Virus record (IMG/VR): IMGVR_UViG_3300032242_002454
Span: 124,001-188,000 of that record
Reading direction: 5' to 3' (one strand)
Length of the DNA: 64,000 nt
This document shows positions 8,980-58,214 of the stretch, piece after piece; position 1 is the first letter of the stretch, and the number at the start of each line of letters is the position of its first letter. The position numbers and the translations under genes were made by a program. The notes below the pieces were generated by a model. The model did not search any database and had not been told where the DNA came from. It worked only from the letters and a program-made list of their open reading frames with translations.

Positions 8980-9031
8980 GATTAGTGTATTAATTAGTAC
9001 ATATTAATGACCAATTAAATAGGAACATACT

Positions 9032-9727
9032 ATGTACGATGCTGTTGTTATTAGTGATTTACATATTTCATCCAATATTTCACAGACCAGACAAATACTG
9101 CATTTTTTGCACAAAATCTACCAGAATGAAATTAAGACTAAATCACTCATCATAAATGGCGATCTATTTGATAATTTAGATTTTCGTAGACTAAAGAATG
9201 GACATTGGAAAGTTTTAGCATACATTAGAAAAATCTCTAACAAGACTAAGGTTATATACATTTCTGGTAATCATGATGGGCCAGCTAATATTATATCTCA
9301 TATTCTTGGTGCTAACTTTGTAGAGGAATATACTTTTTTTAGTGGACATAATAAAGTAGTAATACTTCATGGAGATAGATTTGATAATTTTATCAGTAAA
9401 CATCCTAGACTTACCAAACTAGCTGATAATATCTACAGAATGATACAAAGAATAGACCCAAGTTTTTATTGGGCCAGACTATTGAAACGTAGCAGTAAAA
9501 TCTTTTTAAGATGTTCTAATCAAATCAAAGACAGAGCAAAACAATATGCTAAATCCATCGGTGCTAATATTATTATTTGCTCTCATACCCATCACGCCTT
9601 GACAGATAAGTCTGATATGGTACACTATATCAACAGCGGTTCGTGGACAGAAAATCCTTGTCACTATGTATTAATAAAAAATGGTCGTGCAAAACTCAAA
9701 GAATTTGAATCCCCCATCACTGGCTGA
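9032..9727 (+). CDS. UDP-2,3-diacylglucosamine hydrolase (LpxH)-like metallophosphoesterase
   Basis: SDLH, NGDLFD, GNHD, LHGDRFD, SHTH, NSGSW motifs. Confidence 0.8.
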   Translation: MYDAVVISDLHISSNISQTRQILHFLHKIYQNEIKTKSLIINGDLFDNLDFRRLKNGHWKVLAYIRKISNKTKVIYISGNHDGPANIISHILGANFVEEYTFFSGHNKVVILHGDRFDNFISKHPRLTKLADNIYRMIQRIDPSFYWARLLKRSSKIFLRCSNQIKDRAKQYAKSIGANIIICSHTHHALTDKSDMVHYINSGSWTENPCHYVLIKNGRAKLKEFESPITG

Positions 9728-11158
9728 TTTTCATTCTCATATTCATACTTGGCTTGATGTTCTTGAGGAAAAAGCTAAGAAACAAACTTATGGAGATGAA
9801 CAAACAGTCTATTATTTTTTTAAGGAAAATAAGAAATATCACAAAATTACCCAAGTGTGGGAAGGAATTGAAACTATTCATGCTTTTGTGAACAAAACTA
9901 ATGGAGATATTTATAAGCCAGCAAGCTACTCCGCTCCGTACAAAGACACTAGATATAATCTGTTTACTGATTTTGACAAACTATTAGAGGAATGTGATTG
10001 GGCAGGTTCATACCTGTATAAAAAATGAAAGAAATTAAAAAAGAAGTCCGCTATCTAACAGATAAGCCAAAGATTAAAGCTTTGGTTGATGATGTGGGTG
10101 TTGAACATATTCTCAAATATTTGCTAGAATATCTTGATTCATTTGATATTGAATCAGATAGTGATCTATGGAAATTCAAGGTTGCTGATAGTATTGAGGA
10201 CGCTTATGATAATTATATCAACCGATTTAAGGAGACTGAACGAGCATGAGACTTGACCTAGCTATGGGATTAAAGGTTGGAGACAAGATTGTTAATGTAT
10301 TCATGGATGAACTTGTTATATCTCAAATAGAACATAATTATGATCCAAAACCACCAGTATTTATAGCATTGGATACTATGCTACAAAAACACTATTTGTG
10401 GTTTGATGAAATTTATTATCCAGATTTGTCCGATATTTGTGATGAAGAAAAAAGTTTTGTTCTTTGGGCTAGAGATAATAAACAATTGATTGGAGAAAAT
10501 TCCAGACTATCCAAAGAGATTTATATGCAAGGATATGCTAATGGTTTTAATTCTAAGCTGAAGTATTCGTATGAGGAACAGATGCAAAAATGAGCGACCA
10601 GAAATACGATCCAGACTGGAATCCAGATGATTATGATATGACGCTCAAGTATGAGCCAATGGACTTGTCCAAAGTAAATACTATACTAACAAAGTATAAA
10701 GGACAACCAGTATTAGATTATATTATTGAACTATATAAGTTAATTGAATATCAAAAACAAAGGATATTTCAACAGGAAAAAGAGATTATTGCTTTAAGAC
10801 ACGAAAAAGCATGGAAACACTATGACAATCCTATTGAGAATTATGATCCAGCTACAAGAAAGAATATAAATAGACCCCCAAAATCTGGTAATGCGAGTTG
10901 CTAATTATGATGATTTCAGAAATCAAGAAATGGGCTAAAGAAAAAGGTTATGAAATAATTAAAGACAAGGAGGATGGTCTTTATTATTGGGCCAAACTAA
11001 ATGCTGGGCCAGATGCTAGTGGTGTAGCAAAAAGCGTTAGTAAAGTAGCTACTGCAATTTTTAACCATATTACAGAAGATAAGTTTGTTGAATATCAACT
11101 TAAATATAAAGAAGAGAAAGAATATACTAAATTTACAGTGAGTGATTATGGCTCTTAA
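9681..11158 (+). other. five hypothetical ORFs (9681..10028, 10025..10249, 10246..10593, 10590..10904, 10898..11158)
   Basis: ATGA-coupled ORFs. Confidence 0.7.
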
Positions 11159-11639
11159 AAGTTTATATATTGATAGAGAATGGGAAACTAAGTGCATAGA
11201 TAAAATCTGTAATGAGATTAGAGATCGTTTTTCCTATGAAGATAAAGCGGCAATATTACAGTTAAGCTATGAATATTCTGGAATTATGGCTCAGTTAATG
11301 AGTCATAAATTATCTATAAAAGATGAACCATTAGATATTGAACCAGTTAATATCCCATACAAAAATGAATTTGAAGCATTTATTCATCCAGATCAACTTG
11401 ATCCTTATAACAAATTGATTATTGTAGATAGTGGATGTCTTAGCGGTAATAACTTTACAAAAATAGAAAAGAAATTATTAGACTATGGATTTGCTCGTTG
11501 GCAGTTATTTTTTACATGCGTAGCTTGTGATTTAAATAGTATTTTTCGACCAGACTTTTGCCCAATATATTTTGATGGTAATAATCAAATCTGTCACTTC
11601 TGGTGGGAGACAAGAACAGAAAAATTTAGGAGAGACTAA
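11148..11639 (+). CDS. phosphoribosyltransferase-fold protein
   Basis: LIIVDSGCLSGNNF resembles the PRPP-binding loop (hhhhDDxxxSGxT). Confidence 0.55.
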   Translation: MALKSLYIDREWETKCIDKICNEIRDRFSYEDKAAILQLSYEYSGIMAQLMSHKLSIKDEPLDIEPVNIPYKNEFEAFIHPDQLDPYNKLIIVDSGCLSGNNFTKIEKKLLDYGFARWQLFFTCVACDLNSIFRPDFCPIYFDGNNQICHFWWETRTEKFRRD

Positions 11640-12280: not shown

Positions 12281-12281
12281 T

Positions 12282-17751: not shown

Positions 17752-17824
17752 GGGGCGTTCGTCTAATGGTCTAAGACGCTAGTCTTATTAACTAGCTAAG
17801 GGAGTTCGATTCTCTCACGCCCTA
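17752..17824 (+). tRNA. tRNA-Ile (anticodon UAU), atypical U37
   Basis: Acceptor GGGGCGT/ACGCCCT+A; D stem GTCT/AGAC; anticodon stem CTAGT/ACTAG with loop CT-TAT-TA; T arm GGGAG-TTCGATT-CTCTC. Confidence 0.8.
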
Positions 17825-17864
17825 CTTTTGCTTTAAGTATTCGATTCTTGATTGAAAGCAAGTA

Positions 17865-18389: not shown

Positions 18390-18443
18390 CTTAATTTAGC
18401 TCTTGTTCATATTTTGGTGTAAAGATATGTACAGGAAATAACT

Positions 18444-21307: not shown

Positions 21308-21364
21308 TTATTGGTTCCAATTAAGAGCGGTGTATAAAAATGTCCCGCCTCAAAGGAGCCTACC

Positions 21365-22673: not shown

Positions 22674-23469
22674 ATGGGAAGCGTAACGAATCTAAAAGAA
22701 AATAAAACAATTTTCATTCCGTGTTCTTGTAAGAGTGAAATTTTAATGATCGAATATGATCATGAAATAGATATGGCTGATCTGGCAATATTTGAACATT
22801 ATACAAATTATAGCAATAAGATGTCATTATGGCAGAGACTACGATATTGTTTTCAGGTTTTGGTATATAAAAAACCCTATTCTGATCAGATGGTGCTAGA
22901 CAAAAAACAATTAAAAGATTTGCAAAAATTCCTGAGTGGACTTAGCCTTTAAGGTGTATATTATAAGGTTTCCTAACTTATAACAGGGAGGCTAATTATG
23001 GTCGTTAGAACAGCAGTAGAATTCATGAATGATCAATTAGCTGATAGAGTGAAGGTCTTACAAAAAGCTTTAAACCAAGCAGAAAATATTATAACCACTC
23101 TAGAAAAAGAAAACAACAATCTAAAAGACGTTCTTAATAATCTAACGTCAGAAAATAAGGAAGATTATATGCTTAATAGCGAGGCTTTTAATGAGCCAGT
23201 GTTTACGGTCTAAAAATAAAAGAGTAATAACACAAATTGGTGAGAATGAATATTTGGTTGAAGGCGAAAGTGATTGGGCTAGATTTGGTTGTCAATCAGA
23301 TATATCAATAATAACTTCCGCTAATTTAGAAGGTGGCCCATTTTTATTAGTGGGCGATTCTTTTTTGGGTAAAGGTAAAATCTCAGCAATACAAAATATT
23401 GACAGTGGCAGAGATGGCTATATAATAATCAAAGTTACCTTATTCTCTAAAAAGGAAAAACATGATTAA
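22674..23469 (+). other. three hypothetical ORFs (22674..22952; 22998..23213 coiled coil; 23191..23469)
   Basis: ORF track. Confidence 0.7.
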
Positions 23470-24895: not shown

Positions 24896-24972
24896 CTTTA
24901 ATGTGGTGTAAAAAGTAGACAAAATATATCTATCTTGGTGTATGTAATTGTGGCACATACAAGGAGATAGTT

Positions 24973-28131: not shown

Positions 28132-28482
28132 ATGCCATATATTAAAGAAGAAAATAGACTTACTCTTGATGAATGTATTGATCATATGGTGGTTTGTTTG
28201 AAAAATAGTGCTTTCAGAGCATCATTTGATCCAAATAAAAATAATTATATGAAGGAAGAACTAAGTAATGAAGATGTTTTAGCTATAGTTGGAGATATTA
28301 ATTACTGTATTTCTCGTGTTGTTTCTAAGCTAATGGGCAAGGTATCGTATTCTAAAATAGCAATGATTACAGGAGTATTAGAAAATATAAAGCAAGAGTT
28401 TTATCGTAGAATTGGTGTATCTTTAGAAGATAAGAAAATTATAGAAAATGGAGATATACCAGAATACAAAAGGTTATGCTAA
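28132..28482 (+). CDS. conserved phage hypothetical protein
   Basis: MPYIKEE...GDINY...EFYRR...NGDI pattern typical of a widespread phage family. Confidence 0.75.
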   Translation: MPYIKEENRLTLDECIDHMVVCLKNSAFRASFDPNKNNYMKEELSNEDVLAIVGDINYCISRVVSKLMGKVSYSKIAMITGVLENIKQEFYRRIGVSLEDKKIIENGDIPEYKRLC

Positions 28483-29195: not shown

Positions 29196-29205
29196 AGGTG
29201 TATAA

Positions 29206-38883: not shown

Positions 38884-39188
38884 TGTTTAATTTTCTGAAT
38901 AAAATCAGGTTTGCAGTAAGATCTCCAAAATGGAGTACTGTAAGAAAACAACATCTAAAAGAAAATCCATTTTGTATAGCCTGTGGTAGAAATAAAAAAT
39001 TAGAAGTTCACCATAAAACTCCAGTACATATTAGTCCAGAACTTGAATTAGATCCTTCAAATCTTGTTACTTTATGTGCTGATCCGTGTCATATTTTGTT
39101 TGGTCATTTGATGAATTTTAAGAGTTATAATAAATCGGTCATAGAAGATTGTTCGGTGTATTTAAGTAAGGTAAAAAATAGACCCTAA
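38883..39188 (+). CDS. small HNH endonuclease
   Basis: CIACG...LEVHH...NLVTLC...CH. Confidence 0.88.
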   Translation: MFNFLNKIRFAVRSPKWSTVRKQHLKENPFCIACGRNKKLEVHHKTPVHISPELELDPSNLVTLCADPCHILFGHLMNFKSYNKSVIEDCSVYLSKVKNRP

Positions 39189-45113: not shown

Positions 45114-46174
45114 ATATTAATTTATATGCTCCAATAGGAGTAACAGGCTATGGTAATGTGGCCTTTAATTTACTGAAACAGCTTGTTAAACAAGATCATA
45201 ATGTTTGCTTAACTCCAATGGGCAATCCAAAAGTAGAATCAGAGGAAGATTTAAATTTAATCCACCACGCTGTTGGTTTGGGCTCAAGTATTGATTATAA
45301 TGCTGCTTGTATTAAAATTTGGCATCAATTCGATTTACTAACTAGATCTGGTAATGGAAAATATTTAGCATATCCTTTTTTTGAAATAGACACTTTTAAT
45401 ACTCTAGAAAAGCATCATTTAGGATTTCCAGATCAATTAATAGCTAGTAGTGAATGGGCTAAGAATGTTTTATTAGATAATGGCATTAAACAAGAAATTG
45501 GTATTGTACATTTGGGTGTTGATAATACTATTTTTTATCCTAGAGAATTGACAACAAAAAGACCTCAAAATTTTATTTTTATCACAATAGGAAAGTGGGA
45601 AGTTCGCAAGTCGCACGATGTTATTATAGAATGTTTTAATAAAGCATTTTCTAATCAAGATAATGTTGAGCTTTGGATGGTCACACATAATCCATTTTTG
45701 AATGAAACACAAGAAAAAGAATGGTTATCATTAGTTAATATCTCAAATCTTAAAAACAAAATTAAAGTTTTCCCAAGATTACCTAGTCAAGAAAATTTAG
45801 CAGAAGTTTTGTCCTACGCTGACTGTGGATTATATGTTTCCAGAGCGGAAGGATGGAATTTAGAAATACTTGAAACTATGGCAATGAATAAACCAGTTAT
45901 AGTAACAAATTATTCTGCCCATACAGAATATTGTAATTCAAAAAATTCTTATTTGGTCGATATATCAGATAAAGAATTAGCTAATGATGGTAAATGGTTT
46001 CATGGAGAGGGTAATTGGGCTAAGATTGGCGAAAAAGAAAAAGATCAAATTATTGAACACATGAGATATGTGTATTCCAATAAAATTAACACCAATCCAG
46101 AAGGTATACAAACAGCACAAAATTTTACTTGGGAAAATTCGGCCAAGCAATTAGTTAGGTGTATAGAAAAATAA
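45110..46174 (+). CDS. glycosyltransferase, GT-B fold (GT4-like)
   Basis: GKWEVRK, SRAEGWNLEILETMAMNKPVI. Confidence 0.88.
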   Translation: MNINLYAPIGVTGYGNVAFNLLKQLVKQDHNVCLTPMGNPKVESEEDLNLIHHAVGLGSSIDYNAACIKIWHQFDLLTRSGNGKYLAYPFFEIDTFNTLEKHHLGFPDQLIASSEWAKNVLLDNGIKQEIGIVHLGVDNTIFYPRELTTKRPQNFIFITIGKWEVRKSHDVIIECFNKAFSNQDNVELWMVTHNPFLNETQEKEWLSLVNISNLKNKIKVFPRLPSQENLAEVLSYADCGLYVSRAEGWNLEILETMAMNKPVIVTNYSAHTEYCNSKNSYLVDISDKELANDGKWFHGEGNWAKIGEKEKDQIIEHMRYVYSNKINTNPEGIQTAQNFTWENSAKQLVRCIEK

Positions 46175-47361: not shown

Positions 47362-48288
47362 ATGAATAATTTTCATAAAATATTACTAAATATAGAGCAA
47401 GCAATAGCTGCACAAAAAACATATGATGGCAAAAAAAGAAGTGATCTGAAAGACAGTGATTTCCTTTTTCCAGAAACACAATCATTTCCAATCGTATCTC
47501 CAACAGATGTAAAAGATGCTATTAGTAATTATGGAAGAATGAGTGAAAAAATAACTTATGATGCTTTTTTAAGGAAACTTTATAATTTTTGTAAGAAAAA
47601 AGGTTCAGAATTTGTAGCAGCACTACCTGATGCTAGTAAAGAAAAATTAGGCATTAAAAGTAATGCTGATGATGTTTTTGATTTAATAACATCTCCACCA
47701 GAAAATTTATCTGAGGATGAAGAAAATTCTTCTATAGTAGAAAATGAAGAAACTATAAAAGAATTATATGATATGTCTCTTTCTTCCATAAAGTCCATCA
47801 ATGTACATGTACAGGGAATTTTAAATGCTATTGACAATAACAACATGGACGTAAAAGACAATTTGACAGAAGCTTGGCTTCAGGGTAAAATCGCCATAGT
47901 TGCTGACTATGTTAGACAAATACATGATTTTCTCATGTTTTCTCAGGATTCTGACGATATTGAAAATAGCGATACTACAGCGAATAAAGCTATTAAGAAA
48001 AAAAAGAAAATCCAACCATCATTTTTACATAATTTTCCATTTTTACATTTTAGCGCACCCATTACAACTAATGAAGAATCTCAAGAAAATGAGAATAATG
48101 AAACAGAAGAAATGCCTGAAACCTCAGAACCATCCACCATTTCTAAAACAGGACTATGGGATAATATTCGTAAAAAGAAAGAAAGAGAAGGCAAGAATTA
48201 TAAACCAGCTAAACCTGGAGATAAAGATAGACCAGATCCAAAAACTTGGAAAAAGTTAATCGACGAAGAAAATAAGAAGAAGAACTAA
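47362..48288 (+). CDS. multi-module hypothetical protein
   Basis: SDLKDSDFLFP module; GLWDNIRKKKER...RPD module; acidic linkers. Confidence 0.7.
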   Translation: MNNFHKILLNIEQAIAAQKTYDGKKRSDLKDSDFLFPETQSFPIVSPTDVKDAISNYGRMSEKITYDAFLRKLYNFCKKKGSEFVAALPDASKEKLGIKSNADDVFDLITSPPENLSEDEENSSIVENEETIKELYDMSLSSIKSINVHVQGILNAIDNNNMDVKDNLTEAWLQGKIAIVADYVRQIHDFLMFSQDSDDIENSDTTANKAIKKKKKIQPSFLHNFPFLHFSAPITTNEESQENENNETEEMPETSEPSTISKTGLWDNIRKKKEREGKNYKPAKPGDKDRPDPKTWKKLIDEENKKKN

Positions 48289-48333: not shown

Positions 48334-48915
48334 ATGGAAAAAGAATTCGACAGTCTGTCTGCGTATATTACTTTAGCTAAAAAAATTATATCCAAGTTTG
48401 CTCCAACATTTTATAGTAATCTTCGTCAAGAATTACTATCTAATGAGGATGCTATAGCAGATATAGCTTCTGCTATTATGATTGGAGATTGGAGATGGGA
48501 TGAAAATAGATCAGGCTTTAATGGCAAGTCCAAGACTAAATATTCCTATAGAAATCAATGTGGTATTTGGGCGATTAAAACCTATCTTTCTAATAAATAT
48601 AGAAAGTGCAATACTCATTATTCTATAGATGCCACAGATGTCAATGATGTTAATTTTTCAGATAATATTAGTGATAAAGAAGAGTATGATCCTTCTCTTT
48701 TGGCTGAGAAAGAAGAATACAATGATGCTCTAAAATCTAATATAAATAACATTCTTAGTTGTGGTATTATTTCTGATAAGCAAAGAGATCAGATTAAACA
48801 GTATTATTTTGAAGAAAAAACACTGTCAGAGATCGGTAGAGATTTTGGAGTAACAAGAGAAGCAGTTAGACAAAATATTCAGAAGGGTCTTTCTAAAATC
48901 AGAGAATATGTATAA
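48334..48915 (+). CDS. RNA polymerase sigma factor (sigma70 family, regions 2+4)
   Basis: Region 4 HTH KTLSEIGRDFGVTREAVRQNIQKGLSKIR; region-2-like WDENR...KYSYRNQCGIWAI. Confidence 0.82.
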   Translation: MEKEFDSLSAYITLAKKIISKFAPTFYSNLRQELLSNEDAIADIASAIMIGDWRWDENRSGFNGKSKTKYSYRNQCGIWAIKTYLSNKYRKCNTHYSIDATDVNDVNFSDNISDKEEYDPSLLAEKEEYNDALKSNINNILSCGIISDKQRDQIKQYYFEEKTLSEIGRDFGVTREAVRQNIQKGLSKIREYV

Positions 48916-50089
48916 AACTAATGTCTGTTTATTTATTAGTTCTTTTGATCTAGAGAAAAATGAAAGATTTATTCTTTCAACTACAGAAGAAAAATATATT
49001 CCTTTGTCAATTGAACTTCAGGATTATCATAAAACAGTTCGTGATGCTTTGAGAGAATTATTTGAATCCACAGTTGTGATAGATTTTGAATGGATTAATC
49101 CTCTTTTGGTTGATGTTCTTAAAGAAGATGATTCCGTTAATATTCACTATGCTTGTACTATTCCTCCAGAAACAGAAATTAAACAGGGTTCTCGTATAAG
49201 TGTGCATTTGGCCATTATAAATAAAATTGCTAGAAAGTCATTATCATATGTTTAGTTTTTTAAAATCCATATTTCATTCTCGTAAGAAAGAAGAGACAAA
49301 AGAAAACTATTTATGTAGTATAAAAATAGAATTAAACCATGATAGTTCTATTAATATAGTGTGTTATTGGCCTGATTTAACAAATTTAGATGAAGATGTT
49401 ATTGATAATGTTGCCAATCCCTATGCTGGTTTATTATATCTATTAAATGGGGGCTCATTAAATCAAGATATTATTAAGGCTTTGTCTAATTTTCAAGAAA
49501 ATAATATTGAAGATTCTTATTTTGTAAATAAAGTTTTAACCAAATGGCTAGAATTAGCCACTCCTAAAATTGATTCAAAAAAATATAATATAGATCCGAT
49601 GATCAGACCATCTAGTGTATTTAAAAACTATACTAAGTAGATATTCTCGTATTTAAATAGGACAATATGAAAAACGTATATAATGAGGATAATCTAGTAG
49701 TTTGGCAAAAATGGTTTGATCCTTTTGGAGATGACGATACTCCAGAGCTAGGGCTTCATCGCACTAATGATGAAGAGTCCGATGATGTAGAAGGTAATTA
49801 CGAAGAAGTTAGAGAGATACAAAAACCTATGAGAGCTATTGCTACTCCTATGGGTTTGATACCTTATACAGAAAATACTGCATCTGGTAAGATTTTTAAT
49901 TTTTGGGTAGGCCATACCAACTTCAATGTTAATAATGATATTGTGGATATAATTGAAAATACTGATGGAGTAGAAACACTAGATGTTTTTACTAGATATA
50001 GGTTTCGTATTGCTATTGGCAAAGTATTTGATGACGCTAAGGTTATGAAAGAAATTAATGATCAAGTATATTATCACCTAGGTAATTAA
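48908..50089 (+). other. three hypothetical ORFs (48908..49255, ~49248..49640, 49667..50089)
   Basis: ORF track. Confidence 0.7.
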
Positions 50090-50090: not shown

Positions 50091-50768
50091 ATGGTAATAG
50101 CCTCTCCTAATGATAGTGAAATCAATGATATCCATAATTTTAATATAGATATCAAAAATAGAGAGGTATATCTACACTCATATATAGATGGTGCAGATGA
50201 AGGTGGTGTTGATTATAGGTCAGCTGTTGTATTTGAAAAAAATATCAGATATCTAAATACACTATCTTCCGAACCCATATTAGTTCATATGCACTTGCCG
50301 GGAGGAGAATGGCAAGACTGCTTAGGAATATATGATACTATTAGATTTTCTAAATCTAGAATTGTTGTACTAGCTTATGCAAAAGTAGAGTCCTCAAGTA
50401 GCGTCATATTCCAAGCTGCACCACTAAGGATTCTAACTCCAAATGCTACTATGCTAATTCATTATGGTTCATTTAGTATGGATAGTGAACACTCTAAGGC
50501 TGCTGCTAGTTCTATCAAATGGAATGAACAAGAGTGTGATAAGATGATTGAAATTTTTACCGACAGATGTATGGAAAGTGAACTAGCTAAACAAAAGAAT
50601 TGGAAGAAAATGATGGCCAGAAAACACATCACTTCCCAATTGGCTAATAAGTGTGATTGGATTTTAACTTCTAACGAAGCAGTAGAGTATGGGTTTGCAG
50701 ACGGTGTATTAGGTAGTAAGAAATACCCCAGTATTGAACTACTTAAAACACACAGAATTAAAAAATGA
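50091..50768 (+). CDS. ClpP-like protease subunit
   Basis: HLPGG...GIYDTI; Ser (KVESS), His (LIHYG), Asp (CDWILT); EAVEYGFAD. Confidence 0.82.
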   Translation: MVIASPNDSEINDIHNFNIDIKNREVYLHSYIDGADEGGVDYRSAVVFEKNIRYLNTLSSEPILVHMHLPGGEWQDCLGIYDTIRFSKSRIVVLAYAKVESSSSVIFQAAPLRILTPNATMLIHYGSFSMDSEHSKAAASSIKWNEQECDKMIEIFTDRCMESELAKQKNWKKMMARKHITSQLANKCDWILTSNEAVEYGFADGVLGSKKYPSIELLKTHRIKK

Positions 50769-51409: not shown

Positions 51410-51473
51410 TAGACCTTCTTTTAGTTTTAGGGTATAGTATAATTAGCATTTCCGTCAACCATGGGAGAATAAA

Positions 51474-52028
51474 ATGGCTATAGCAAAAACATCTGGTTCT
51501 GATTATACAGTACCTCCAAACGTAAAGTCCAGTGGCTCAGTTAATAACAGAGGCACAGTAGCTCGTGGTGGCTCAGTTGCTTCTGGTAAGCTCACAAACG
51601 TAGGCGTTAGTAGATATAACACAACAGTATTTGCTTCAACAGTTCTTGATAATAGTTGGGCTGATAAAGCTCTAAGTGCTGGCACTTTTGCTTATAATGA
51701 TAAGAATGGTGTTGCTATGAGAACCACATCAGATATAGCTGGTGTTGCTAATACTTCATTGTTAACTGGAGCTAATGTTCCAGGTATCACTCGTAGTATC
51801 CACAAACTTGAAACCCTTAGAACTCGTAGATTCACAACAGCTATCAGAGCTAACAAGTACAACCTTTATACAGGAACATTCGATAATGGTTATCCTGTTG
51901 TAGCTGTTGATACATTAGCCACAGATAATGCTGCAAATCCAACTCGTTCTGCTCCTGGTCAGCTTACTTATAAGCTTGGTGGCGTAGTACCAGTTATAAA
52001 TAATGATTACAAGGCTAAGACTGGCTGA
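51474..52028 (+). CDS. G/S/T-rich protein, possibly a virion structural protein
   Basis: Own promoter-like motif upstream and terminator downstream; biased codon usage. Confidence 0.55.
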   Translation: MAIAKTSGSDYTVPPNVKSSGSVNNRGTVARGGSVASGKLTNVGVSRYNTTVFASTVLDNSWADKALSAGTFAYNDKNGVAMRTTSDIAGVANTSLLTGANVPGITRSIHKLETLRTRRFTTAIRANKYNLYTGTFDNGYPVVAVDTLATDNAANPTRSAPGQLTYKLGGVVPVINNDYKAKTG

Positions 52029-52057
52029 GTATAACTAATCAATTTTACTATACAACT

Positions 52058-52091
52058 AAAGCCAGCGATGCCTTGAGTGTCGTTGGCTTTT
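52058..52091 (+). terminator. intrinsic terminator
   Basis: AAAGCCAGCGATGC-CTTGA-GTGTCGTTGGCTTT then a T-rich tract. Confidence 0.75.
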
Positions 52092-52116: not shown

Positions 52117-52434
52117 ATGAGCGAAACAATTATTCATTTCTGGGAAAATATTGCTACAACCAGTATTGGCATTATTGTTACTATGGTAGGGTTTTGGGTG
52201 GCTATAGGACGAAATATGGCTACTAAATCAGAAGTTTTAGTAATGATTGAGACACAATCTCCATATGTACATGATCGTCAATTTATTATGGAAAGATTAA
52301 ATACTAATAAAGAAACCCAAGCGGCTTTTGCTAATGCTTTACAAAGAAACACTGAAGTTATGACAGAATTAAAAATTCAAATAGCAACACTTGGTAAAAC
52401 TCTAGAGGCTCTAGAAGACCGCATCGAAAAATAG
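52117..52434 (+). CDS. TM plus coiled-coil protein
   Basis: SIGIIVTMVGFWVAIG followed by heptads. Confidence 0.7.
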   Translation: MSETIIHFWENIATTSIGIIVTMVGFWVAIGRNMATKSEVLVMIETQSPYVHDRQFIMERLNTNKETQAAFANALQRNTEVMTELKIQIATLGKTLEALEDRIEK

Positions 52435-52473
52435 TGTATATAATTACAACCCCTTATTCTGGAGAATCAAACA

Positions 52474-52683
52474 ATGGCTAGACCATATACAGACGTTCAA
52501 GCTGCAATCAGTGGTAATGTGGTTAAAAATGGCACAGCAGTCGTATCAACAACATTTACTGGTAAATATTCAACAAATAACAATTACGTCAAGAACACAC
52601 CAGCAATCAGTACCATTTACAATAAATATGGCAATAAGTTCTATAATGGTATATTTGTTAAAGTATTACCTAGCGGCACATGA
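52474..52683 (+). CDS. hypothetical protein
   Basis: GGAG RBS. Confidence 0.6.
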   Translation: MARPYTDVQAAISGNVVKNGTAVVSTTFTGKYSTNNNYVKNTPAISTIYNKYGNKFYNGIFVKVLPSGT

Positions 52684-52719
52684 TATTTTTTGGCAATTTA
52701 AAATGGGAGTTTAACATTC

Positions 52720-53064
52720 ATGGTCAAACCCGGCTATAGAACTAGCGAATTTTGGTTCACTATGGTCAGCTTTGTTTTTAGTGGACTATATTTAATGGGA
52801 ATCATTGGAGAGAATAGTCAGAAAGAAGATTTGATTCAAGAAACAAGTAGAGGTCTAGAAGCTACAATACTTATTATAGGACAATTAACAGTTCTATTTA
52901 AGTATGTATCAAGTAGAGCTGAACTAAAGAAAACTTGGTGGAGCACAGCTAATCCAGAAGAAAGAAAAGTAGCAAATAGAGCTAATAGTAGAAAAAAGAA
53001 AAAACCCAAAAACACCACAGGAAAAACCAATGCCAAATCCGATAGTCCTATTACAGATCAATAA
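52720..53064 (+). CDS. holin-like two-TM protein
   Basis: KPGYRTSEFW N-terminus, two TM helices, strongly basic C-tail. Confidence 0.5.
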   Translation: MVKPGYRTSEFWFTMVSFVFSGLYLMGIIGENSQKEDLIQETSRGLEATILIIGQLTVLFKYVSSRAELKKTWWSTANPEERKVANRANSRKKKKPKNTTGKTNAKSDSPITDQ

Positions 53065-54339
53065 CATCGTTGACTCTGCTAAAGCTATGCTTAAACAAGC
53101 AGAATCAGTAGCAGTTCCTCAAGCATGGAATTTATTACAGTTAGCAATAGCAGATATAGTCCAACAAATTCAATTAACTCATCCAGAACTAAAAGGATCT
53201 AATAAAAAAGAAATAGCTATGAATGCCGTTTCTAGTTTTTATGATCAGGTTTTTTTAGTAGTAGAATTTCCCTTTCTACCACACTTGCTACAACCTATTA
53301 TACAAAAGTACGTTAAACAGCTGTTAATGATTTTAGTTGGCGCTTCTATAGATGCTATGGTTACTACCTTTAAAAATACTGGTGTTTTCAGTACTCCAAC
53401 AGTTGATAATACAGTCGATAATACCCCTAAAGTTTCAGATAAATGAGAAAGAGAGATTCCAATGAATTTCACAGAAAGTTTCCAAGAGTTTAGTAGTCGT
53501 TTGAGCACAATGGATTTGGCTCTTTATGCTGGTGCTGGTCTTGTACTATGGGTTTTATTTAAGGATAAGTTGAGTCCCGTACAAACATTCTTGGGTGGTC
53601 TATTAGCTAAAATGAAAGGCTCCACTCCTTCTTCTGTTGTACCAATTGTTGTACCATCAGTTGATGCTGTTGTTGTTCCAAAGTTAGCAGCTAATCAACC
53701 AGATGATACTTTTTTTAAGCTAGTTGTATCATGGAAGCAAACCAGAGATTTGGCTGTTCAAAGCGGTTGCGGCGAAGCAGTTAAGGTTGCTGACCAAATG
53801 TTTCCTTTCCTAAGTCCCAATGTTTGCAAAAAAGAGGATAAAGTATCATGAGCATGGATAAAAAAGTATTATTAGCACTAGGTGGTTTACTCATTTTAGT
53901 AGGTCTACTTAAGCCAGAGTTTTCTGATATGTTTAAGCCTAGACCAACTGTAGTAGATGTTCTTGAATTATCAGTACCAACAGATGAAGCTGTAAAAAAA
54001 GAAGCTGATGATGTTGTAATAGTTCTAAAAGAAGCTGGTATCAAGTCAGAAGCTAGGAAGCTAAGAGATTTATATATTGATTTAGCAAAGCTAGTTGAAC
54101 TTGACGGTGAAGACGAAGTAATTAAAAGTACTGAAGAAATTCGTCAAGCTAATAGTCTAGCTGGTATTATGCTCAGATTGGATATGAAAGGTAAATATCC
54201 AAATCTAGCTAAAGAAGCAAAAGAAGTAGTAGTTGCTTCTATTGGTGATGATCAAATTCTTTTATCAAAAGAGCTAAGAGTTAAAGCTGTAGAAGGTCTT
54301 AATGCTTTAGCTTGGGCTTGCAATGAAGGGTCAAAATAA
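53030..54339 (+). other. three membrane-associated hypothetical ORFs (53030..53446, 53462..53851, 53848..54339)
   Basis: Hydrophobic or N-terminal TM segments; coupled. Confidence 0.7.
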
Positions 54340-55265
54340 TGCCACGTTATTCTCCAAAAGAGCTTTACGATAACTATCGTCAAGGATTTAGTGGTTGCAT
54401 ATGGGAGCAACACGTATACGACCATTTTATGGAGAATGCAAAATATCCATTGTTTGGTGATGCTAGTAAAAAAATTAAAAATTCTGGTAAAGGGAAACTT
54501 TCAACACCGTATAAGAGTGTGTTAAGGTTTGAGAAGAATCCTTATAATGAAAGACAAACTGTCGGAGATTGTGTCAGTCATGGAACACGAAATGCTTGTG
54601 ATGTTACTAGAGCGGTAGAAATAGATGTAAATCACGAAAGAGAAGATTGGGTAACAAAAGGTGCAACGGAAGCTATTTATGGTGCTAGGGGTTTTTCTGG
54701 TGAAGGCATGAGTTGTGCTAGAGCCGCTGAATTTGTTAGTAAGATTGGTGGTATAGTTCTTAGAAAGAATTATCCCGGCATTGCTGACTTTAGTAAATAC
54801 AATGGCAATCTAGGTGCTGGCTGGGGAGGTCGAGGACTTCCAGATAAAGTATTAGACTTAGCCAATGATCATCAGATCAAAACTGCTTCATTAATTAGAA
54901 CAGTAGAAGAGGCTCGTGATGCTCTATCTAATGGCTATGGTATAGCAGTATGTTCTAATTATGGTTTTAGTAATACAAGAGATAAAAGGGGATTTGCTAA
55001 ACAATCTGGTAGCTGGGGGCATTGTATGGCTTGGATAGCATGTGATGATACTGGTAGTGAGCCAGCCTTTTTAGTCCAAAATAGCTGGGGAAAGTGGAAT
55101 GATGGTGGACATCCCGAATGGGGTCCAATTCCAGATGGTTCATTTTTAATTCATGTTGATGTAGCTGCTGGTATGCTTGCTATGAATGGCTCATATACAT
55201 TTAGCAGTTTTGACGGTTTTCCTCTCCAAAAGCTACCAAGCTACGGGTTTGAAGACTATCTCTAA
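54339..55265 (+). CDS. papain-like (C1A) cysteine peptidase
   Basis: Q-TVGDC (oxyanion Gln, catalytic Cys), GHCMA (His), QNSWG (Asn). Confidence 0.88.
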   Translation: MPRYSPKELYDNYRQGFSGCIWEQHVYDHFMENAKYPLFGDASKKIKNSGKGKLSTPYKSVLRFEKNPYNERQTVGDCVSHGTRNACDVTRAVEIDVNHEREDWVTKGATEAIYGARGFSGEGMSCARAAEFVSKIGGIVLRKNYPGIADFSKYNGNLGAGWGGRGLPDKVLDLANDHQIKTASLIRTVEEARDALSNGYGIAVCSNYGFSNTRDKRGFAKQSGSWGHCMAWIACDDTGSEPAFLVQNSWGKWNDGGHPEWGPIPDGSFLIHVDVAAGMLAMNGSYTFSSFDGFPLQKLPSYGFEDYL

Positions 55266-55343
55266 AATTCGCAATTAGCTATTTTAAACCATCATCTCTA
55301 TTAGGTGTATATATTTATATATCTAAATTCCTAGGAATATTTT

Positions 55344-55571
55344 ATGAACCTAAGAGAAAGATTAGAACTCCGCGCTGTCATTAACATGATCATTGGCATG
55401 ATTGAAACTTTGGCAAAACTATTTACCAAAGCTCAAAAAAAGTTTGGACCAAAACCTAAAATTGATAATCCAGACTCTCCAGTGAAACCCAATAGGCCAC
55501 GACCCTTGAAAAGAGTTGTGGATACTATTGATAATATTATACCTCTTCCATGGAGAGATAAAAATGAATAA
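55344..55571 (+). CDS. hypothetical protein
   Basis: ORF after GGTGTAT motif. Confidence 0.65.
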   Translation: MNLRERLELRAVINMIIGMIETLAKLFTKAQKKFGPKPKIDNPDSPVKPNRPRPLKRVVDTIDNIIPLPWRDKNE

Positions 55572-55920: not shown

Positions 55921-55938
55921 TCAAGGTGGTTGAATCAT

Positions 55939-58170
55939 ATGTCTGATCCAAATACACCACCACCATTTAAGATAGTAGATGATGATTTAATTTATGTTAT
56001 TACTGGATACAATAAAATCAATTGTTTGCCAGACTCTAGAGAATCATCAATAGCTAATCTCAGAAAATATATCATAGATATGATTGGTGTTTCCGGAGTA
56101 GGCTTTTCCAGAGAAGGACCAGCAACAGTATTCTCTACTGCACAAGAAGATAATTTAATAGATATCAATTATTCTAGTTCCTATCCATATACTCAGAAAA
56201 TAGCAACTACTGGATTAAATAGTAAAACAGAAAATTTAATAGTAAAAGACTATGATACTATTTGGCCATATAGTGGAATACTCTATAATACTGGATTAAA
56301 TGCTGTTGTTGGAAATAATGTAGAAATACAATTTTCCACAGGAACACCGGCAGCAAATAAGTATGGTGGGGTTGGAGGAAAATATTTTAGTGGAATTATC
56401 TCTACAACAGGACTTAATTCTCGTACAGAGAATTTAATTGTTAGAGATTTTGAAACTTCCTGGCCTTATAGTGGTATTATCTACAATACTGGATTGAATG
56501 CCAGAATTGGAAATAATATGGAGATTCAATTCTCAACATCAACTCCGGCTGCTAATAAATACGGTGGTGTTGGAGGAAAATATACTAGCGGTATTATTTC
56601 TACTACTGGACTTAATTCTCGCACAGAAAATCTAATAGTAAGAGATTTTGAAACCGATTGGCCCTATAGCGGTGTTATCTATAATACTGGTTTGAATGCT
56701 GTTGTTGGAAATAATATGGAAATCCAATTTTCAACATCCACACCAGCAGCTAACAAATATGGTAGAGTTGGAGGTAAATATACTAGTGGCATAGTTTCAA
56801 CTACAGGATTAAATGCAAGAAGTGAAAATTTAATAGTAAGAGATTTTGAAAGAGCTTGGCCTTATAGTGGAGTAATTTACAATACTGGTTTGAATGCTAG
56901 AGTTGGTAATAATATGGAAATTCAATTTTCCACAGATACTCCCGCAGATGATAAATATGGTGGAGTTGGAGGTAAATATACCAGCGGTATTATTTCCACT
57001 ACTGGATTAAATTCCAGAACGGAAAACCTAATAGTCCGAGACTTTGAAACTGATTGGCCATATAGTGGTGTGATATATAATACAGGATTAAATGCTAGAG
57101 CTGGTAATTTAATACAAATTCAATATCAATCATCTTCTCCGGCTGGTGGTATTTATGGTGGAACCGAAGGAAAATATAAATCAGGTATTATTTCTACAAC
57201 CGGTTTAAATATGATAGATGGATCTAATATAGGTTATACTATAGGAACTTCTTTTCCTCATAAATATACTATTTTTACAGTTGACCAAGCTAGAACATCT
57301 ACTGACCCAATAACATTTATTAATAATAGCGCTAATACTATCAGTACTACATCTGGATATATAGATCCAGCAATGGTTATAGATTATAGTCCATTATATA
57401 CTTCAAAACCTGGTGAAAATATTAATTTGATTTCTTCTTTTAAATTTTTGACAGATGATAGTGGAGATAATGATTGGTATGTCTCATTTACTATGCCATT
57501 AGCTTCTACAATGAAAATAAAAGAATTGATCCCAGTATCAGGAGTATCATATTCAACTACTGCTAACTCATGTTATATGACAACAAGAAGCGTATATAAT
57601 CCAGAAACTGATGATTATATTAATGTTCCTTATTGTCAAACAACATTTAAAACTATTACAGACCCTAATCCTTCGGACTTAAGTGGTTGGACACCAGTAT
57701 CAGCAGCTATAACAGCAAAATCATTCTATTTTTCTATTCTATGTAGTGGAGGATCATCGTCTGAATTTGCAAAAGGAACATTAACATTTACTAATCCTAG
57801 TGGTGCGGCTTGTTATACTGCAAATGGTGGAGAGACATATAATTTTGGCGCAAGTTTTATTAAAGAAGCATATAGACCAAGTGGTTATGAGCTTGATCGT
57901 TTAAATCCTATGGAGATAGAATTTTTCCAACAATTATCAATTAATAGCAACACAATAAATAACTACAATGCTACCTCTCCTAAATTTAATATTTCTAATT
58001 TTGGATATACTAGAACATACAGAAAACTTATAGGATATGGTGATTTATGTATTGGAGATGCTTGTACCTATAATGCAACACCCGTATATAGGTATTATAC
58101 AGCAACTGCATATGGCCCAGCTTCATTCACAATAGGTAAAAGATCCTTTAGAACAACAAATGTATCATAA
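55939..58170 (+). CDS. large protein with five 66-aa tandem repeats
   Basis: Repeat TTGLNSRTENLIVRDFETDWPYSG...GKYTSGIIS. Confidence 0.85.
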   Translation: MSDPNTPPPFKIVDDDLIYVITGYNKINCLPDSRESSIANLRKYIIDMIGVSGVGFSREGPATVFSTAQEDNLIDINYSSSYPYTQKIATTGLNSKTENLIVKDYDTIWPYSGILYNTGLNAVVGNNVEIQFSTGTPAANKYGGVGGKYFSGIISTTGLNSRTENLIVRDFETSWPYSGIIYNTGLNARIGNNMEIQFSTSTPAANKYGGVGGKYTSGIISTTGLNSRTENLIVRDFETDWPYSGVIYNTGLNAVVGNNMEIQFSTSTPAANKYGRVGGKYTSGIVSTTGLNARSENLIVRDFERAWPYSGVIYNTGLNARVGNNMEIQFSTDTPADDKYGGVGGKYTSGIISTTGLNSRTENLIVRDFETDWPYSGVIYNTGLNARAGNLIQIQYQSSSPAGGIYGGTEGKYKSGIISTTGLNMIDGSNIGYTIGTSFPHKYTIFTVDQARTSTDPITFINNSANTISTTSGYIDPAMVIDYSPLYTSKPGENINLISSFKFLTDDSGDNDWYVSFTMPLASTMKIKELIPVSGVSYSTTANSCYMTTRSVYNPETDDYINVPYCQTTFKTITDPNPSDLSGWTPVSAAITAKSFYFSILCSGGSSSEFAKGTLTFTNPSGAACYTANGGETYNFGASFIKEAYRPSGYELDRLNPMEIEFFQQLSINSNTINNYNATSPKFNISNFGYTRTYRKLIGYGDLCIGDACTYNATPVYRYYTATAYGPASFTIGKRSFRTTNVS
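56206..57210 (+). repeat. 5.1 x 198-bp coding tandem repeat
   Basis: Unit starts at 56206, 56404, 56602, 56800, 56998, 57196. Confidence 0.92.
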
Positions 58171-58214
58171 GGTGTATCAAATTAAGATTCAATCATTTTA
58201 ATAAGGTGATAATT

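What the first reader, a model, noticed from the sequence alone, without database searches (positions are those of the whole stretch)
8984..58186. Second promoter-like class (G/A)GTGTAT-N-AT-rich, the likely target of the phage sigma factor
A GGTGTA(T) word followed by an AT-rich run lies shortly upstream of genes lacking TTGACA promoters: 8984, 18416, 21329, 22953, 24905/24937, 29197, 39155, 46158, 49614, 52433, 55304, 58171 (variant GGGTATAGTATAAT at 51430). It is the only recurring promoter-like motif I found in the late-looking region after 46 kb and it precedes two of the free-standing HNH genes. The window encodes its own sigma factor (48334..48915), so a middle/late regulon is the simplest reading.
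Basis: partly seen in the sequence, partly recalled or inferred. Interest (0 to 1): 0.6.

Follow-up and report, generated by a model that had tools for sequence, protein, structure and literature searches.

The report
Phage middle/late promoter motif GGKGTAT
A short DNA word, (A/G)G(T/G)GTAT followed by an A/T-rich run, sits 26-76 bases upstream of about 30 non-early genes of an uncultured 205-kb freshwater phage and of its relatives. It is very probably the promoter read by a phage-encoded sigma factor, but the phage has two such factors and the data do not say which one reads it.

Summary
The raw count of GGTGTA is not above chance. What is far from chance is where the word lies and on which strand.

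- **Whole phage (204,625 bp):** 24 of 64 GTGTAT words lie 20-90 nt upstream of a start codon on the same strand (2.8 expected, p about 1e-16).
- **Window:** 12 of 24 (1.7 expected).
- **Outside the early region:** it is the top enriched upstream word. It precedes structural genes on the opposite strand and five free-standing HNH genes.
- **Relatives:** in about 170 related metagenomic loci it is kept upstream of the same orthologues while the flanks diverge or the site moves. Examples are 15/15, 13/14, 14/18 and 48/63.
- **Not host sigma-70 type:** there is no -35 element and no T at the would-be -7 position.

A single-element middle/late promoter read by a phage sigma is the best reading (about 0.75). 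The attribution to the sigma at 48334 is not established. A second, equally conserved sigma-like gene lies outside the window. The window's sigma has a canonical -35-binding domain that this promoter class has no use for. No transcription start site data exist. This is a new member of a known kind, closest to phiEco32 gp36 and T4 late promoters.

The parts
8984..8990 (+). Motif site AGTGTAT plus A/T run, 47 nt upstream of ORF 9032-9727 (metallophosphoesterase-like)
   Evidence: (PWM 13.6). Intergenic.
18416..18422 (+). Variant site GGTGTAA, 27 nt upstream of the HNH/endonuclease VII-like gene 18444-18977
   Evidence: (PWM 8.9). The last core base is A, so this is a weaker candidate.
21329..21335 (+). 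Motif site GGTGTAT, 35 nt upstream of ORF 21365-21790
   Evidence: PWM 12.8.
22953..22959 (+). Motif site GGTGTAT directly after the stop codon of the upstream ORF, 44 nt upstream of ORF 22998-23213
   Evidence: PWM 12.4.
24905..24943 (+). Two sites after tRNA-Leu: weak GGTGTAA at 24905 and strong GGTGTAT at 24937, the latter 35 nt upstream of HNH gene 24973-25443
   Evidence: (PWM 15.8 for 24937).
28414..28420 (+). It lies inside the 3' end of ORF 28132-28482, 61 nt upstream of HNH gene 28476-29195.
   Evidence: (PWM 12.9).
29197..29203 (+). Motif site GGTGTAT just after the HNH gene, 64 nt upstream of the ATG at 29261
   Evidence: PWM 16.3.
39155..39161 (+). Motif site GGTGTAT in the last codons of ORF 38856-39188, 61 nt upstream of the trypsin-like protease gene 39217-39957
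   Evidence: GTGTA[TC] is kept in 9 of 13 distinct orthologous upstream regions. The Val-Tyr codons are always GTG-TAT.
46158..46164 (+). Motif site GGTGTAT overlapping the end of the glycosyltransferase gene, 27 nt upstream of ORF 46186-46752. It heads the run of genes that includes the sigma gene.
   Evidence: PWM 17.2, the best in the genome; 14 of 18 relatives.
47863..47891 (+). Sigma-70-type promoter TTGACA-17-TAAAAT embedded in ORF 47362-48288, about 440 nt upstream of the sigma gene
   Evidence: Both hexamers are invariant in about 60 relatives, while synonymous sites of the spacer codons vary. Two distant relatives instead have a perfect promoter directly upstream of the gene.
48334..48915 (+). 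Phage sigma factor, 193 aa, with a sigma2 and a canonical sigma4 domain. One of two candidate readers of the motif.
49614..49620 (+). Motif site AGTGTAT in the last codons of ORF 49227-49640, 52 nt upstream of ORF 49667-50089
   Evidence: GTGTAT in 6 and GGGTAT in 8 of 39 orthologous upstream regions. It is lost where the two genes abut.
50703..50709 (+). GGTGTAT inside the head-maturation protease gene, 61 nt upstream of ORF 50765-51409. It is ambiguous because coding conservation could explain it.
   Evidence: PWM 13.2. Distant relatives L022 and L023 have a non-coding GTGTAT 30-34 nt before the orthologue.
51429..51435 (+). Variant site AGGGTAT after a T-rich run, 44 nt upstream of ORF 51474-52028
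   Evidence: Of 63 distinct orthologous upstream regions, 29 carry GGGTAT and 19 carry GTGTA[TC]. An RNA-library contig covers 51464-52044 and none covers the gene upstream.
52058..52090 (+). Intrinsic-terminator-like hairpin (14 pairs) with a T-rich tail, closing the 51474 unit
   Evidence: The RNA-library contig ends at 52044. In relatives a GTGTAT follows this T-tract directly.
52433..52439 (+). Motif site AGTGTAT overlapping the stop of ORF 52117-52434, 40 nt upstream of ORF 52474-52683
   Evidence: 13 of 14 relatives, at non-homologous positions within a variable spacer.
55304..55310 (+). Motif site GGTGTAT, 39 nt upstream of ORF 55344-55571, which heads the unit with the 743-aa ORF
   Evidence: 15 of 15. 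GGTGTAT is the only long invariant block of the intergenic alignment.
58171..58177 (+). Motif site GGTGTAT right after the stop of the 743-aa ORF, 43 nt upstream of ORF 58215-58619
   Evidence: (PWM 13.5). Kept only in the closest relative.

Best explanation
The word (A/G)G(T/G)GTAT followed by about six A/T-rich bases is a single-element, -10-type promoter. It drives the middle and late genes of this phage: structural genes, proteases, several small ORFs and the free-standing HNH endonuclease genes.

**Proposed sequence of events**
1. Host RNA polymerase with host sigma-70 first transcribes the early region from TTGACA-N17-TAnAnT promoters.
2. Both phage sigma genes have such promoters, so both proteins are made early.
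3. A phage sigma then replaces sigma-70 on the host core enzyme.
4. It opens DNA at GGKGTAT without using a -35 contact and starts transcription a few bases downstream, inside the A/T-rich run.

**Which steps are shown and which inferred**
- Shown: the placement, strand bias, gene-specific conservation and composition of the element, and the existence and fold of the two sigmas.
- Inferred: that the element is a promoter, where transcription starts, and which sigma reads it.

**My split among readers, given that it is a promoter**
- About 0.45: the 218-aa sigma-like protein outside the window.
- About 0.35: the window's 193-aa sigma.
- About 0.2: both together, or host sigma-70 with a phage co-factor.
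For: **Placement and strand**
- Genome: 24 of 64 GTGTAT lie in the same-strand upstream zone against 2.8 expected. Window: 12 of 24 against 1.7.
- All 31 PWM hits of 12 bits or more are on the coding strand, and 24 of them lie 15-130 nt from a start.

**Unbiased word search**
- GGTGTAT is the top word of non-early upstream regions: 10 of 43 against 0.23 expected.
- CTTGACA tops the early regions.

**Sites on the other strand**
- Sites outside the window lie on the minus strand ahead of minus-strand structural genes. These include the site after the terminase gene, sites before head-decoration and tail-fibre-like genes, and the site before a 4023-aa ORF.

**Conservation in relatives**
- Near-start sites: 108 against 14.7 expected in 24 loci, and 119 against 17.2 in 80 loci.
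- It is the top word among 698 distinct upstream regions of 87 loci.
- Retention is gene-specific: 15/15, 13/14, 14/18 and 48/63. It is 0/63 for the sigma gene's own leader.
- In alignments the motif is an invariant island, or it moves within a variable spacer.

**Not a sigma-70 promoter**
- There is no -35 signal in 79 non-redundant sites.
- The would-be -7 position is A43 C7 G4 T25.

**The polymerase and its sigmas**
- Two sigma-fold proteins are encoded.
- No phage RNA polymerase was found.

**Transcription-unit layout**
- Terminator T-tracts lie directly before the motif in several relatives.
- A promoter-gene-terminator layout at 51430-52090 matches an RNA-library contig.

**Precedent**
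- phiEco32 gp36 promoters are a single element, tAATGTAtA, with the start 6-8 bp downstream (PMC8948821, PMC12276001).
Against: - No transcription start site is known. The only RNA data are assembled metatranscriptome contigs of a relative, which cannot show 5' ends and may contain DNA. One of those contigs runs straight across the site at 52433.
- Several sites overlap the last codons of the upstream gene (39155, 46158, 49614, 50703). Part of their conservation could therefore be protein-coding.
- GTGTAT is not avoided inside coding sequence, with observed counts close to expected. Selection against stray sites is therefore not visible.
- Two phage sigmas but only one promoter class besides the sigma-70 type leaves the wiring incomplete.
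- The host and its own sigma factors are unknown.
Confidence: 0.75

Rival explanations
1. One reading: the 193-aa sigma factor encoded at 48334-48915 alone reads the motif.
For: - It is a genuine sigma.
- It is a core gene of the clade, with 212 relatives in IMG/VR.
- It sits among motif-driven genes.
- It has a conserved embedded sigma-70-type promoter, so it can be made before the motif class fires.
- Its sigma2 segment is invariant, as is the motif.
Against: - It has a canonical, well-predicted sigma4 domain: Z 8-9 to -35-binding domains, with a recognition helix close to that of sigma-70. The motif class has no -35 element.
- A second sigma-like protein is an equally good candidate.
- In phiEco32 and 7-11 the sigma with region 4 has a bipartite promoter, and the one without has the single element (PMC8948821).
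Confidence: 0.3
2. The 218-aa sigma-like protein outside the window (genome 98950-99606, minus strand) reads the motif. The window's sigma would then have another job, for example acting as a sigma-70 surrogate at TTGACA-type promoters.
For: - Residues 10-90 fold as sigma2: Z 8.0-8.8, rmsd 1.8-3.1.
- It has no sequence-detectable region 4, which fits a promoter without a -35.
- It shows partial fold resemblance to the sigma-like chain of the T4 late complex 7d7d (Z 7.2 over 114 residues).
- Its sigma2 segment is invariant across relatives of 56-80% identity.
- Its own sigma-70-type promoter carries a conserved GTGTA(A/C/T) in the otherwise variable spacer in about 20 of 28 relatives. That would allow it to activate its own gene, and it gives the terminase gene of that operon its only motif-like element.
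Against: - The match to Sigma70_r2 is below the Pfam cut-off: 20.9 in the six-frame search and 18.9 on the ORF, against 24 bits.
- The model is of middling confidence (pLDDT 68).
- Its C-terminal helices do resemble sigma4 (Z 6.2), so the argument that it lacks region 4 is weak.
- The fold matches lie in the range the tool calls common for helical proteins.
Confidence: 0.35
3. Host sigma-70 holoenzyme reads the word as an extended -10-like promoter, perhaps helped by a phage activator or appropriator, as with T4 MotA/AsiA at middle promoters.
For: - The core ends in TAT, like the start of a -10 hexamer.
- The phage's own early promoters often read GTG-TAnAnT at the -10. The two classes therefore share GTGTA.
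Against: - T at the -7 position, nearly invariant for sigma-70, is not preferred (25 of 79).
- There is no -35 or other fixed upstream box.
- The TG is one base out of register with the extended -10.
- Two phage sigmas would be left without any promoter class.
Confidence: 0.08
4. The word is not a promoter. It is either an RNA-level signal (a processing site or leader element) or the operator of a DNA-binding regulator or antiterminator at the head of transcription units.
For: - Strand specificity and upstream placement would also fit an RNA signal.
- One RNA-library contig crosses site 52433.
- Some sites lie in coding sequence.
Against: - The distance to the start codon varies from 26 to 76 nt and shows no coupling to the ribosome-binding site.
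- No conserved pairing partner or second half-site was seen.
- The A/T-rich downstream run and the preceding terminators fit initiation.
- It is the only candidate promoter for the whole 80-kb structural block.
Confidence: 0.06

Closest known systems
phiEco32 gp36-dependent middle/late promoters (tAATGTAtA)
   Same: - A single conserved element of -10 type with no -35.
[quoted passage not shown]
- The sequence shares the TGTA(T) core.
- Early genes use sigma-70 promoters (PMC8948821, PMC12276001).
   Different: - The upstream half is GG or AG instead of AA.
- There is no detectable sequence similarity of either sigma here to gp36. No PDB hit appeared at E up to 10, only a weak fold match to 9m7y chain F (Z 6.2).
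- phiEco32 is a 77-kb podovirus with one sigma, whereas this is a 205-kb phage with two.
- No gp79-like partner was identified.
- The start site is not mapped here.
T4 late promoters (TATAAATA) read by gp55 with gp33 and the gp45 clamp
   Same: - A -10-only promoter for late genes.
- It is read by a very diverged sigma2-type protein.
- Homing-endonuclease genes carry their own late-type promoters (established knowledge of T4; PMC2988020, PMC7892883).
- The phage also has a T4-like rIIA and a T4-type large terminase.
- The 218-aa protein has a weak fold match to chain F of 7d7d.
   Different: - The consensus differs: only TAT plus an A/T-rich run is shared, and the invariant GKG is absent from T4.
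- No T4-type clamp domain was found (though the control barely rang).
- No gp33 was identified.
- I infer that chain F is gp55. I did not check this.
Bacillus phage SPO1 cascade (gp28 for middle genes, gp33/gp34 for late genes)
   Same: A large lytic phage with two phage-encoded sigma-type factors acting after host-sigma-dependent early transcription (established knowledge; PMC13401047 abstract).
   Different: - SPO1 has two distinct bipartite consensus sequences.
- Here only one class besides the sigma-70 type was found, and it has a single element.
Salmonella phage 7-11 gp47 late promoters (GTAAtg-N16-aCTA)
   Same: A phage ECF-like sigma with region 4 directs late genes (PMC8948821).
   Different: That promoter is bipartite and the motif here is not. 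It serves as the precedent for what a promoter of the window's region-4-bearing sigma might look like.

Membership tests
Host sigma-70-type promoter | -35 hexamer TTGACA-like, 16-18 bp upstream of the -10 | tested here: not met
   The best TTGACA match at spacers 15-19 is distributed as in control positions. No position from -45 to -2 carries information except R at -1.
Host sigma-70-type promoter | -10 hexamer TAnnnT with conserved T at -7 | tested here: not met
   TAT is present, but the position matching -7 is A43 C7 G4 T25 in 79 non-redundant sites.
Single-element phage-sigma promoter (phiEco32 gp36 type) | [quoted passage not shown] | tested here: met
Single-element phage-sigma promoter (phiEco32 gp36 type) | Consensus tAATGTAtA | tested here: not met
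   The consensus here is RG(T/G)GTAT followed by W-rich bases. Only TGTA(T) is shared.
Single-element phage-sigma promoter (phiEco32 gp36 type) | Transcription starts 6-8 bp downstream, and initiation depends on the phage sigma | not testable with these tools
   Only assembled RNA-library contigs were available. There is no culture and no biochemistry.
Single-element phage-sigma promoter (phiEco32 gp36 type) | Sigma homologous to gp36 | tested here: inconclusive
   There is no sequence match in the PDB set, which I expected to hold the gp36 complexes. There is a weak fold match of the 218-aa protein to 9m7y_F (Z 6.2).
T4 late promoter system | Consensus TATAAATA | tested here: not met
   After the invariant TAT the bases are only A/T-rich.
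T4 late promoter system | gp55-type sigma, gp33 co-activator and gp45 sliding clamp | tested here: inconclusive
   The 218-aa protein gives Z 7.2 to 7d7d_F. There is no DNA_PPF hit, but the control rang in only one genome. gp33 was not searched.
Sigma-70 family, ECF-like two-domain sigma (the protein at 48334) | Sigma2 and sigma4 domains over the full length | tested here: met
   TIGR02937 gives 61.4 bits against a cut-off of 42.9, covering positions 4-164 of 165. Pfam Sigma70_r4 gives E 3.8e-12. Fold matches give Z 8-10.
Sigma-70 family, ECF-like two-domain sigma (the protein at 48334) | Cognate promoter is bipartite, with a -35 read by sigma4 | tested here: not met
   If GGKGTAT is its promoter, the -35 is missing. 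No other bipartite class was found.
SPO1-like two-sigma cascade | Two phage sigma genes and two distinct phage-specific promoter consensus sequences | tested here: inconclusive
   Two sigma-like genes are present. Only one class besides the sigma-70 type was detected, with GGGTAT as an interchangeable variant at the same orthologous places.

The most novel reading that the evidence does not exclude
The clade runs a two-sigma programme of a kind not yet described. The GGKGTAT single-element promoters would be read by the 218-aa, zinc-ribbon-bearing, gp55-like sigma, which also feeds back on its own promoter through the GTGTA word in the spacer. The canonical 193-aa sigma, whose -35-reading helix mimics sigma-70, would take over the phage's TTGACA-type promoters after the host sigma-70 is displaced. 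The conserved CCGATAAT spacer box of those promoters could mark them for it.
Probability: 0.15. Interest if true: 0.65.

Novelty: new member of a known kind. Interest (0 to 1): 0.45.

Why it matters
- **Annotation tool.** This gives a testable promoter consensus for a large, entirely uncultured clade of freshwater phages of about 200 kb. The clade has more than 200 IMG/VR contigs and more than 2,000 homologues of one sigma in metagenomes. With the consensus, transcription units and temporal classes can be annotated from sequence alone.
- **A question for the bench.** The clade encodes two sigma factors but shows only one promoter class besides the sigma-70 type. That is a concrete question about promoter recognition without a -35 element. 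It can be settled with two recombinant proteins and E. coli core polymerase.
- **Homing endonucleases.** The free-standing HNH genes carry this promoter, like the T4 homing endonucleases. The parallel is useful for understanding how such selfish genes are timed.

Tried and rejected
- **RNA evidence.** The one read-laying run used assembled metatranscriptome contigs of a relative (X14). They show patchy coverage of 51464-52044, 52270-52732, 52786-53173 and parts of 54084-55499, but no 5' ends. I use them only as weak support.
- **Phylogenetic profiling to separate the two sigmas.** All four complete relatives tested carry both, and each sigma has more than 200 relatives in IMG/VR. This does not discriminate.
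- **Covariation of motif and sigma.** The core is the same in every sub-clade, down to 47% sigma identity. There is nothing to correlate.
- **A third promoter class.** I looked in upstream regions that lack both known classes, in the genome and in 87 loci. Only GTGTAT, its GGGTAT variant, TTGACA and terminator-like words came up.
- **Middle-placed against late-placed sites.** By eye the logos do not differ.
- **Avoidance of the word in coding sequence.** Not seen.
- **Named relatives.** There is no near DNA match among deposited phages. Neither sigma has a useful protein match there. Cluster members are all metagenomic.
- **Literature search for the word itself.** It found nothing.
- **Phage RNA polymerases.** No multisubunit beta or beta-prime domains were found. 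The T7-like search gave no hit, but its control did not ring either.

Full report
**Setting.** The window is bases 124,001-188,000 of a single 204,625-bp viral contig with 34.5% G+C. IMG/VR classes the contig as complete with direct terminal repeats. Near-identical DNA is found only in freshwater and lake metagenomes. No deposited phage is close at the DNA level.

All window genes are on the + strand. In the whole genome a rightward block runs from about 99.9 kb through the contig end to 17 kb. A leftward block, 17-99.8 kb, holds the large terminase, a weak match to a major head protein, head-decoration and tail-fibre-like proteins and giant ORFs.

The raw count of GGTGTA is not above chance: 21 against 17.8 +/- 4.4. 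The signal is in where the copies lie.

- With my own ORF calls, 12 of the 24 GTGTAT copies in the window lie 20-90 nt upstream of a start codon on the same strand. Expected: 1.7 (p 2e-8).
- In the whole genome the figure is 24 of 64 against 2.8 expected (p 1e-16).
- GTGTAT ranks first among the 60 permutations of its letters.
- Inside the upstream zones there are 24 sense copies against 5 antisense.
- A first-order Markov simulation of those zones gives 5.7 +/- 2.4.
- With a weight matrix, all 31 hits of 12 bits or more are on the coding strand, and 24 of them lie 15-130 nt before a start.

An unbiased word count splits the genome into two promoter worlds.
- In the early region (genome 100.6-157 kb, which is the window up to about 33 kb) the top upstream words are CTTGACA and GCCGAT.
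- Everywhere else the top words are GGTGTA, GTGTAT and GGTGTAT. GGTGTAT is found in 10 of 43 upstream regions against 0.23 expected.

Sigma-70-like matches in window 45-64 kb are exactly at chance.

**Anatomy.** From 79 non-redundant sites of this genome and its relatives, the element has three parts:
- R (G 50, A 25) at position -1;
- the core GTGTAT;
- about six positions depleted of G and C.

Nothing is conserved from -45 to -2. TTGACA-like words at -35 spacing are no more frequent than at control positions. The base that would be the -7 T of a sigma-70 promoter is A43 C7 G4 T25. Tolerated variants are GTGTAC, GTGTAA and GGGTAT. The distance to the start codon is 26-76 nt for the strong sites, which is separate from the ribosome-binding site.

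**What it precedes.**
- In the window:
  - a metallophosphoesterase-like gene (9032);
  - three free-standing HNH or endonuclease VII-like genes (18444, 24973, 28476);
  - a trypsin-like protease (39217);
  - the unit that contains the ferritin-like gene and the sigma gene (46186 onward);
  - the units at 49667, 51474, 52474, 55344 and 58215.
- Outside the window, on the minus strand:
  - before the 734-aa ORF just after the terminase gene;
  - before the ORFs around the putative head gene;
  - before a head-decoration or fibre protein;
  - before a tail-fibre-like protein;
  - before the unit with the 4023-aa ORF.
- Also outside the window: two more HNH genes inside the early region, one on each strand.

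So the word follows gene orientation. It marks both late structural units and selfish or accessory genes embedded among early genes.

**Relatives.** The sigma at 48334 and the second sigma-like protein each retrieve more than 200 IMG/VR contigs.

- Around sigma homologues of 47-84% identity, GTGTAT is found 20-90 nt before starts 108 times against 14.7 expected.
- Around the second sigma the count is 119 against 17.2.
- Among 698 distinct upstream regions of 87 loci it is the top word: 176 regions, 8.6-fold. The second family is tttGGGGTAT.

Retention is gene-specific:

| Orthologue of | Distinct upstream regions with the motif |
|---|---|
| 55344 | 15/15 |
| 52474 | 13/14 |
| 46186 | 14/18 |
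| 39217 | 9/13 |
| 52720 | 18/27 |
| 52117 | 33/63 |
| 51474 | 48/63 (19 GTGTA[TC], 29 GGGTAT) |
| 48334 (the sigma gene's own leader) | 0/63 |

- Orthologues of 43989 (0/11) and 46762 (1/21) show none or almost none.
- In alignments GGTGTAT is the invariant island of the 55344 spacer.
- Before 52474 it sits at non-homologous places within a variable spacer.
- Before 49667 it is lost exactly where the two genes abut.
- At 39155, which is coding, Val-Tyr is always GTG-TAT.
- GGGTAT and GTGTAT replace each other at the same orthologous place.

**Transcription-unit context.** A 14-pair terminator hairpin lies at 52058-52090, after the 51474 gene. In relatives a GTGTAT follows this T-tract directly.

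In a lake metatranscriptome, assembled contigs of a relative cover 51464-52044. That span runs from 28 nt after the GGGTAT core to 14 nt before the hairpin. None covers the 1.8 kb upstream. This fits a promoter-gene-terminator unit. However, contigs cannot show 5' ends, DNA may be present in the library, and another contig crosses site 52433. I count it as weak support only.

**Who reads it?** No T7-like or multisubunit RNA polymerase was detected (the T7-like control did not ring), so host core enzyme is the likely polymerase.

The ORF at 48334 is a real sigma.
- TIGR02937 over the full length, 61.4 bits against a cut-off of 42.9.
- Sigma70_r4, E 3.8e-12.
- Model pLDDT 80. Residues 1-94 match sigma2, and residues 125-193 match -35-binding sigma4 domains at Z 8-9.
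- Its recognition helix reads VTREAVRQ, close to VTRERIRQ of sigma-70.
- Its gene has a TTGACA-17-TAAAAT promoter embedded in the upstream gene at 47863. Both hexamers are invariant in about 60 relatives while synonymous sites in the spacer vary. Two distant relatives have a perfect promoter directly upstream instead.

A whole-genome search found a second sigma-like ORF at genome 98950-99606 on the minus strand, 218 aa.
- It gives a weak Sigma70_r2 match: 20.9 bits in the six-frame search and 18.9 on the ORF, against a cut-off of 24.
- The model (pLDDT 68) has a sigma2 domain at residues 10-90 (Z 8.0-8.8, rmsd 1.8-3.1), a four-cysteine insertion, and C-terminal helices that resemble sigma4 at Z 6.2.
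- It has weaker, longer matches to chain F of the T4 late complex 7d7d (Z 7.2 over 114 residues) and of the phiEco32 gp79 complex 9m7y (Z 6.2).
- It is the first gene of the leftward operon that runs on to the terminase gene.
- In about 20 of 28 relatives its sigma-70-type promoter reads TTGAC(T/A)-AAAA-GTGTA(A/C/T)-variable-TATTAT. The motif core is thus conserved inside an otherwise variable spacer.
- All four complete relatives tested carry both sigmas.

So there are two phage sigmas, both apparently made from host-type promoters, and only one class besides the sigma-70 type. The literature precedent is that phiEco32 gp36, without recognisable region 4, uses the single element tAATGTAtA. 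The 7-11 sigma gp47 uses a bipartite promoter, which its authors contrast with gp36's lack of region 4 (PMC8948821; PMC12276001). By that logic the 218-aa protein is at least as good a candidate as the window's sigma. None of my tests separates them.

**Verdict.**
- The promoter reading is well supported by placement, orientation, gene-specific conservation and the absence of sigma-70 features. It lacks any mapped start site.
- The attribution to the sigma at 48334 is plausible but unproven, and it is somewhat disfavoured by that protein's canonical -35-binding domain.
- The kind of thing, a phage-specific single-element middle/late promoter, is known. The consensus and the clade are new.

**Rivals considered.**
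- Sigma-70 with a co-factor: disfavoured by the missing -7 T and by two orphan sigmas.
- An RNA-level signal or an operator: disfavoured by the variable distance to the start codon, the lack of a partner sequence and the terminator-then-motif layout.
- Chance: excluded by the statistics and the conservation.

Noticed in passing
outside the window: genome 98950-99606, minus strand (L029:18950-19606): A second sigma-like gene of 218 aa, with a sigma2 fold, a four-cysteine insertion and sigma4-like C-terminal helices. It has more than 2,000 metagenomic homologues and no named isolate. It is the first gene of the operon that leads to the terminase gene.
   Followed up: yes
outside the window: genome about 99760-99795, minus strand, and the same place in L039-L114: The sigma-70-type promoter of the 218-aa sigma gene keeps a GTGTA(A/C/T) word four bases after the -35 hexamer in most relatives, while the rest of the spacer varies. 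It may be an overlapping early and late dual promoter, or a means for the sigma to regulate its own gene.
   Followed up: partly
window 47863-47891: A sigma-70-type promoter TTGACA-17-TAAAAT hidden in the coding sequence of ORF 47362-48288 (protein motif NLTE..GKI). The codons forming the hexamers are frozen in about 60 relatives, while neighbouring synonymous sites vary. It probably drives the sigma gene.
   Followed up: yes
window 1252, 2773, 5498, 13104, 16050, 21802, 24323, 29820 and 32601, and genome 101-123 kb: Many early TTGACA-N17-TAnAnT promoters carry a conserved box (G/A)CCGATAAT, or a close variant, starting 3-5 bases after the -35 hexamer. They often have GTG or TGG just before the -10. 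The box itself resembles a -10 hexamer. Its function is unknown.
   Followed up: partly
window 18444-18977, 24973-25443 and 28476-29195; genome 113055-113540 (minus strand) and 116288-116809: Five free-standing HNH or endonuclease VII-like genes are inserted among early genes. Each has its own GGTGTA(T/A) word 26-61 nt upstream, one of them on the opposite strand to its neighbours.
   Followed up: partly
window 48289-48333 and the same leader in L004-L024: The short leader of the sigma gene holds two or three repeats of TAGGAC or AAGGAC-like words in most relatives. Related words (AAGGACTT and its complement AAGTCCTTA) are enriched in intergenic DNA genome-wide. This could be a translational or regulatory signal.
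   Followed up: no
window 56206-57210: Five tandem copies of a 198-nt unit (66 aa, about 78% alike) lie inside the 743-aa ORF 55939-58170. They produce periodic false sigma-70-like matches.
   Followed up: partly
outside the window: genome about 100.6-113 kb: This stretch is poor in ORFs (gaps of 0.9-1.6 kb between tiny ORFs) but dense in strong sigma-70-type promoters. It is also rich in G+C-rich repeated words (CCCGGC, GGGCGG, ACTTAGGGC, CGTAAGTCCTTA). It may encode small RNAs or be a decoy or regulatory region.
   Followed up: no
window 17752-17825 and 24823-24896: tRNA-Ile (anticodon TAT) and tRNA-Leu (anticodon TAA). The 24905 and 24937 motif pair begins nine bases after the tRNA-Leu.
   Followed up: no
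window 29889-32579: An 896-aa ORF whose first half resembles T4-type rIIA (32-37% identity to rIIA proteins of enterobacterial phages). It has its own TTGACA-type promoter at 29820.
   Followed up: partly
outside the window: genome 37321-52389 and 63019-75090, minus strand: Giant ORFs of 5022 and 4023 aa lie in the structural block. The 4023-aa ORF lies downstream of the motif pair at 76388 and 76101.
   Followed up: no
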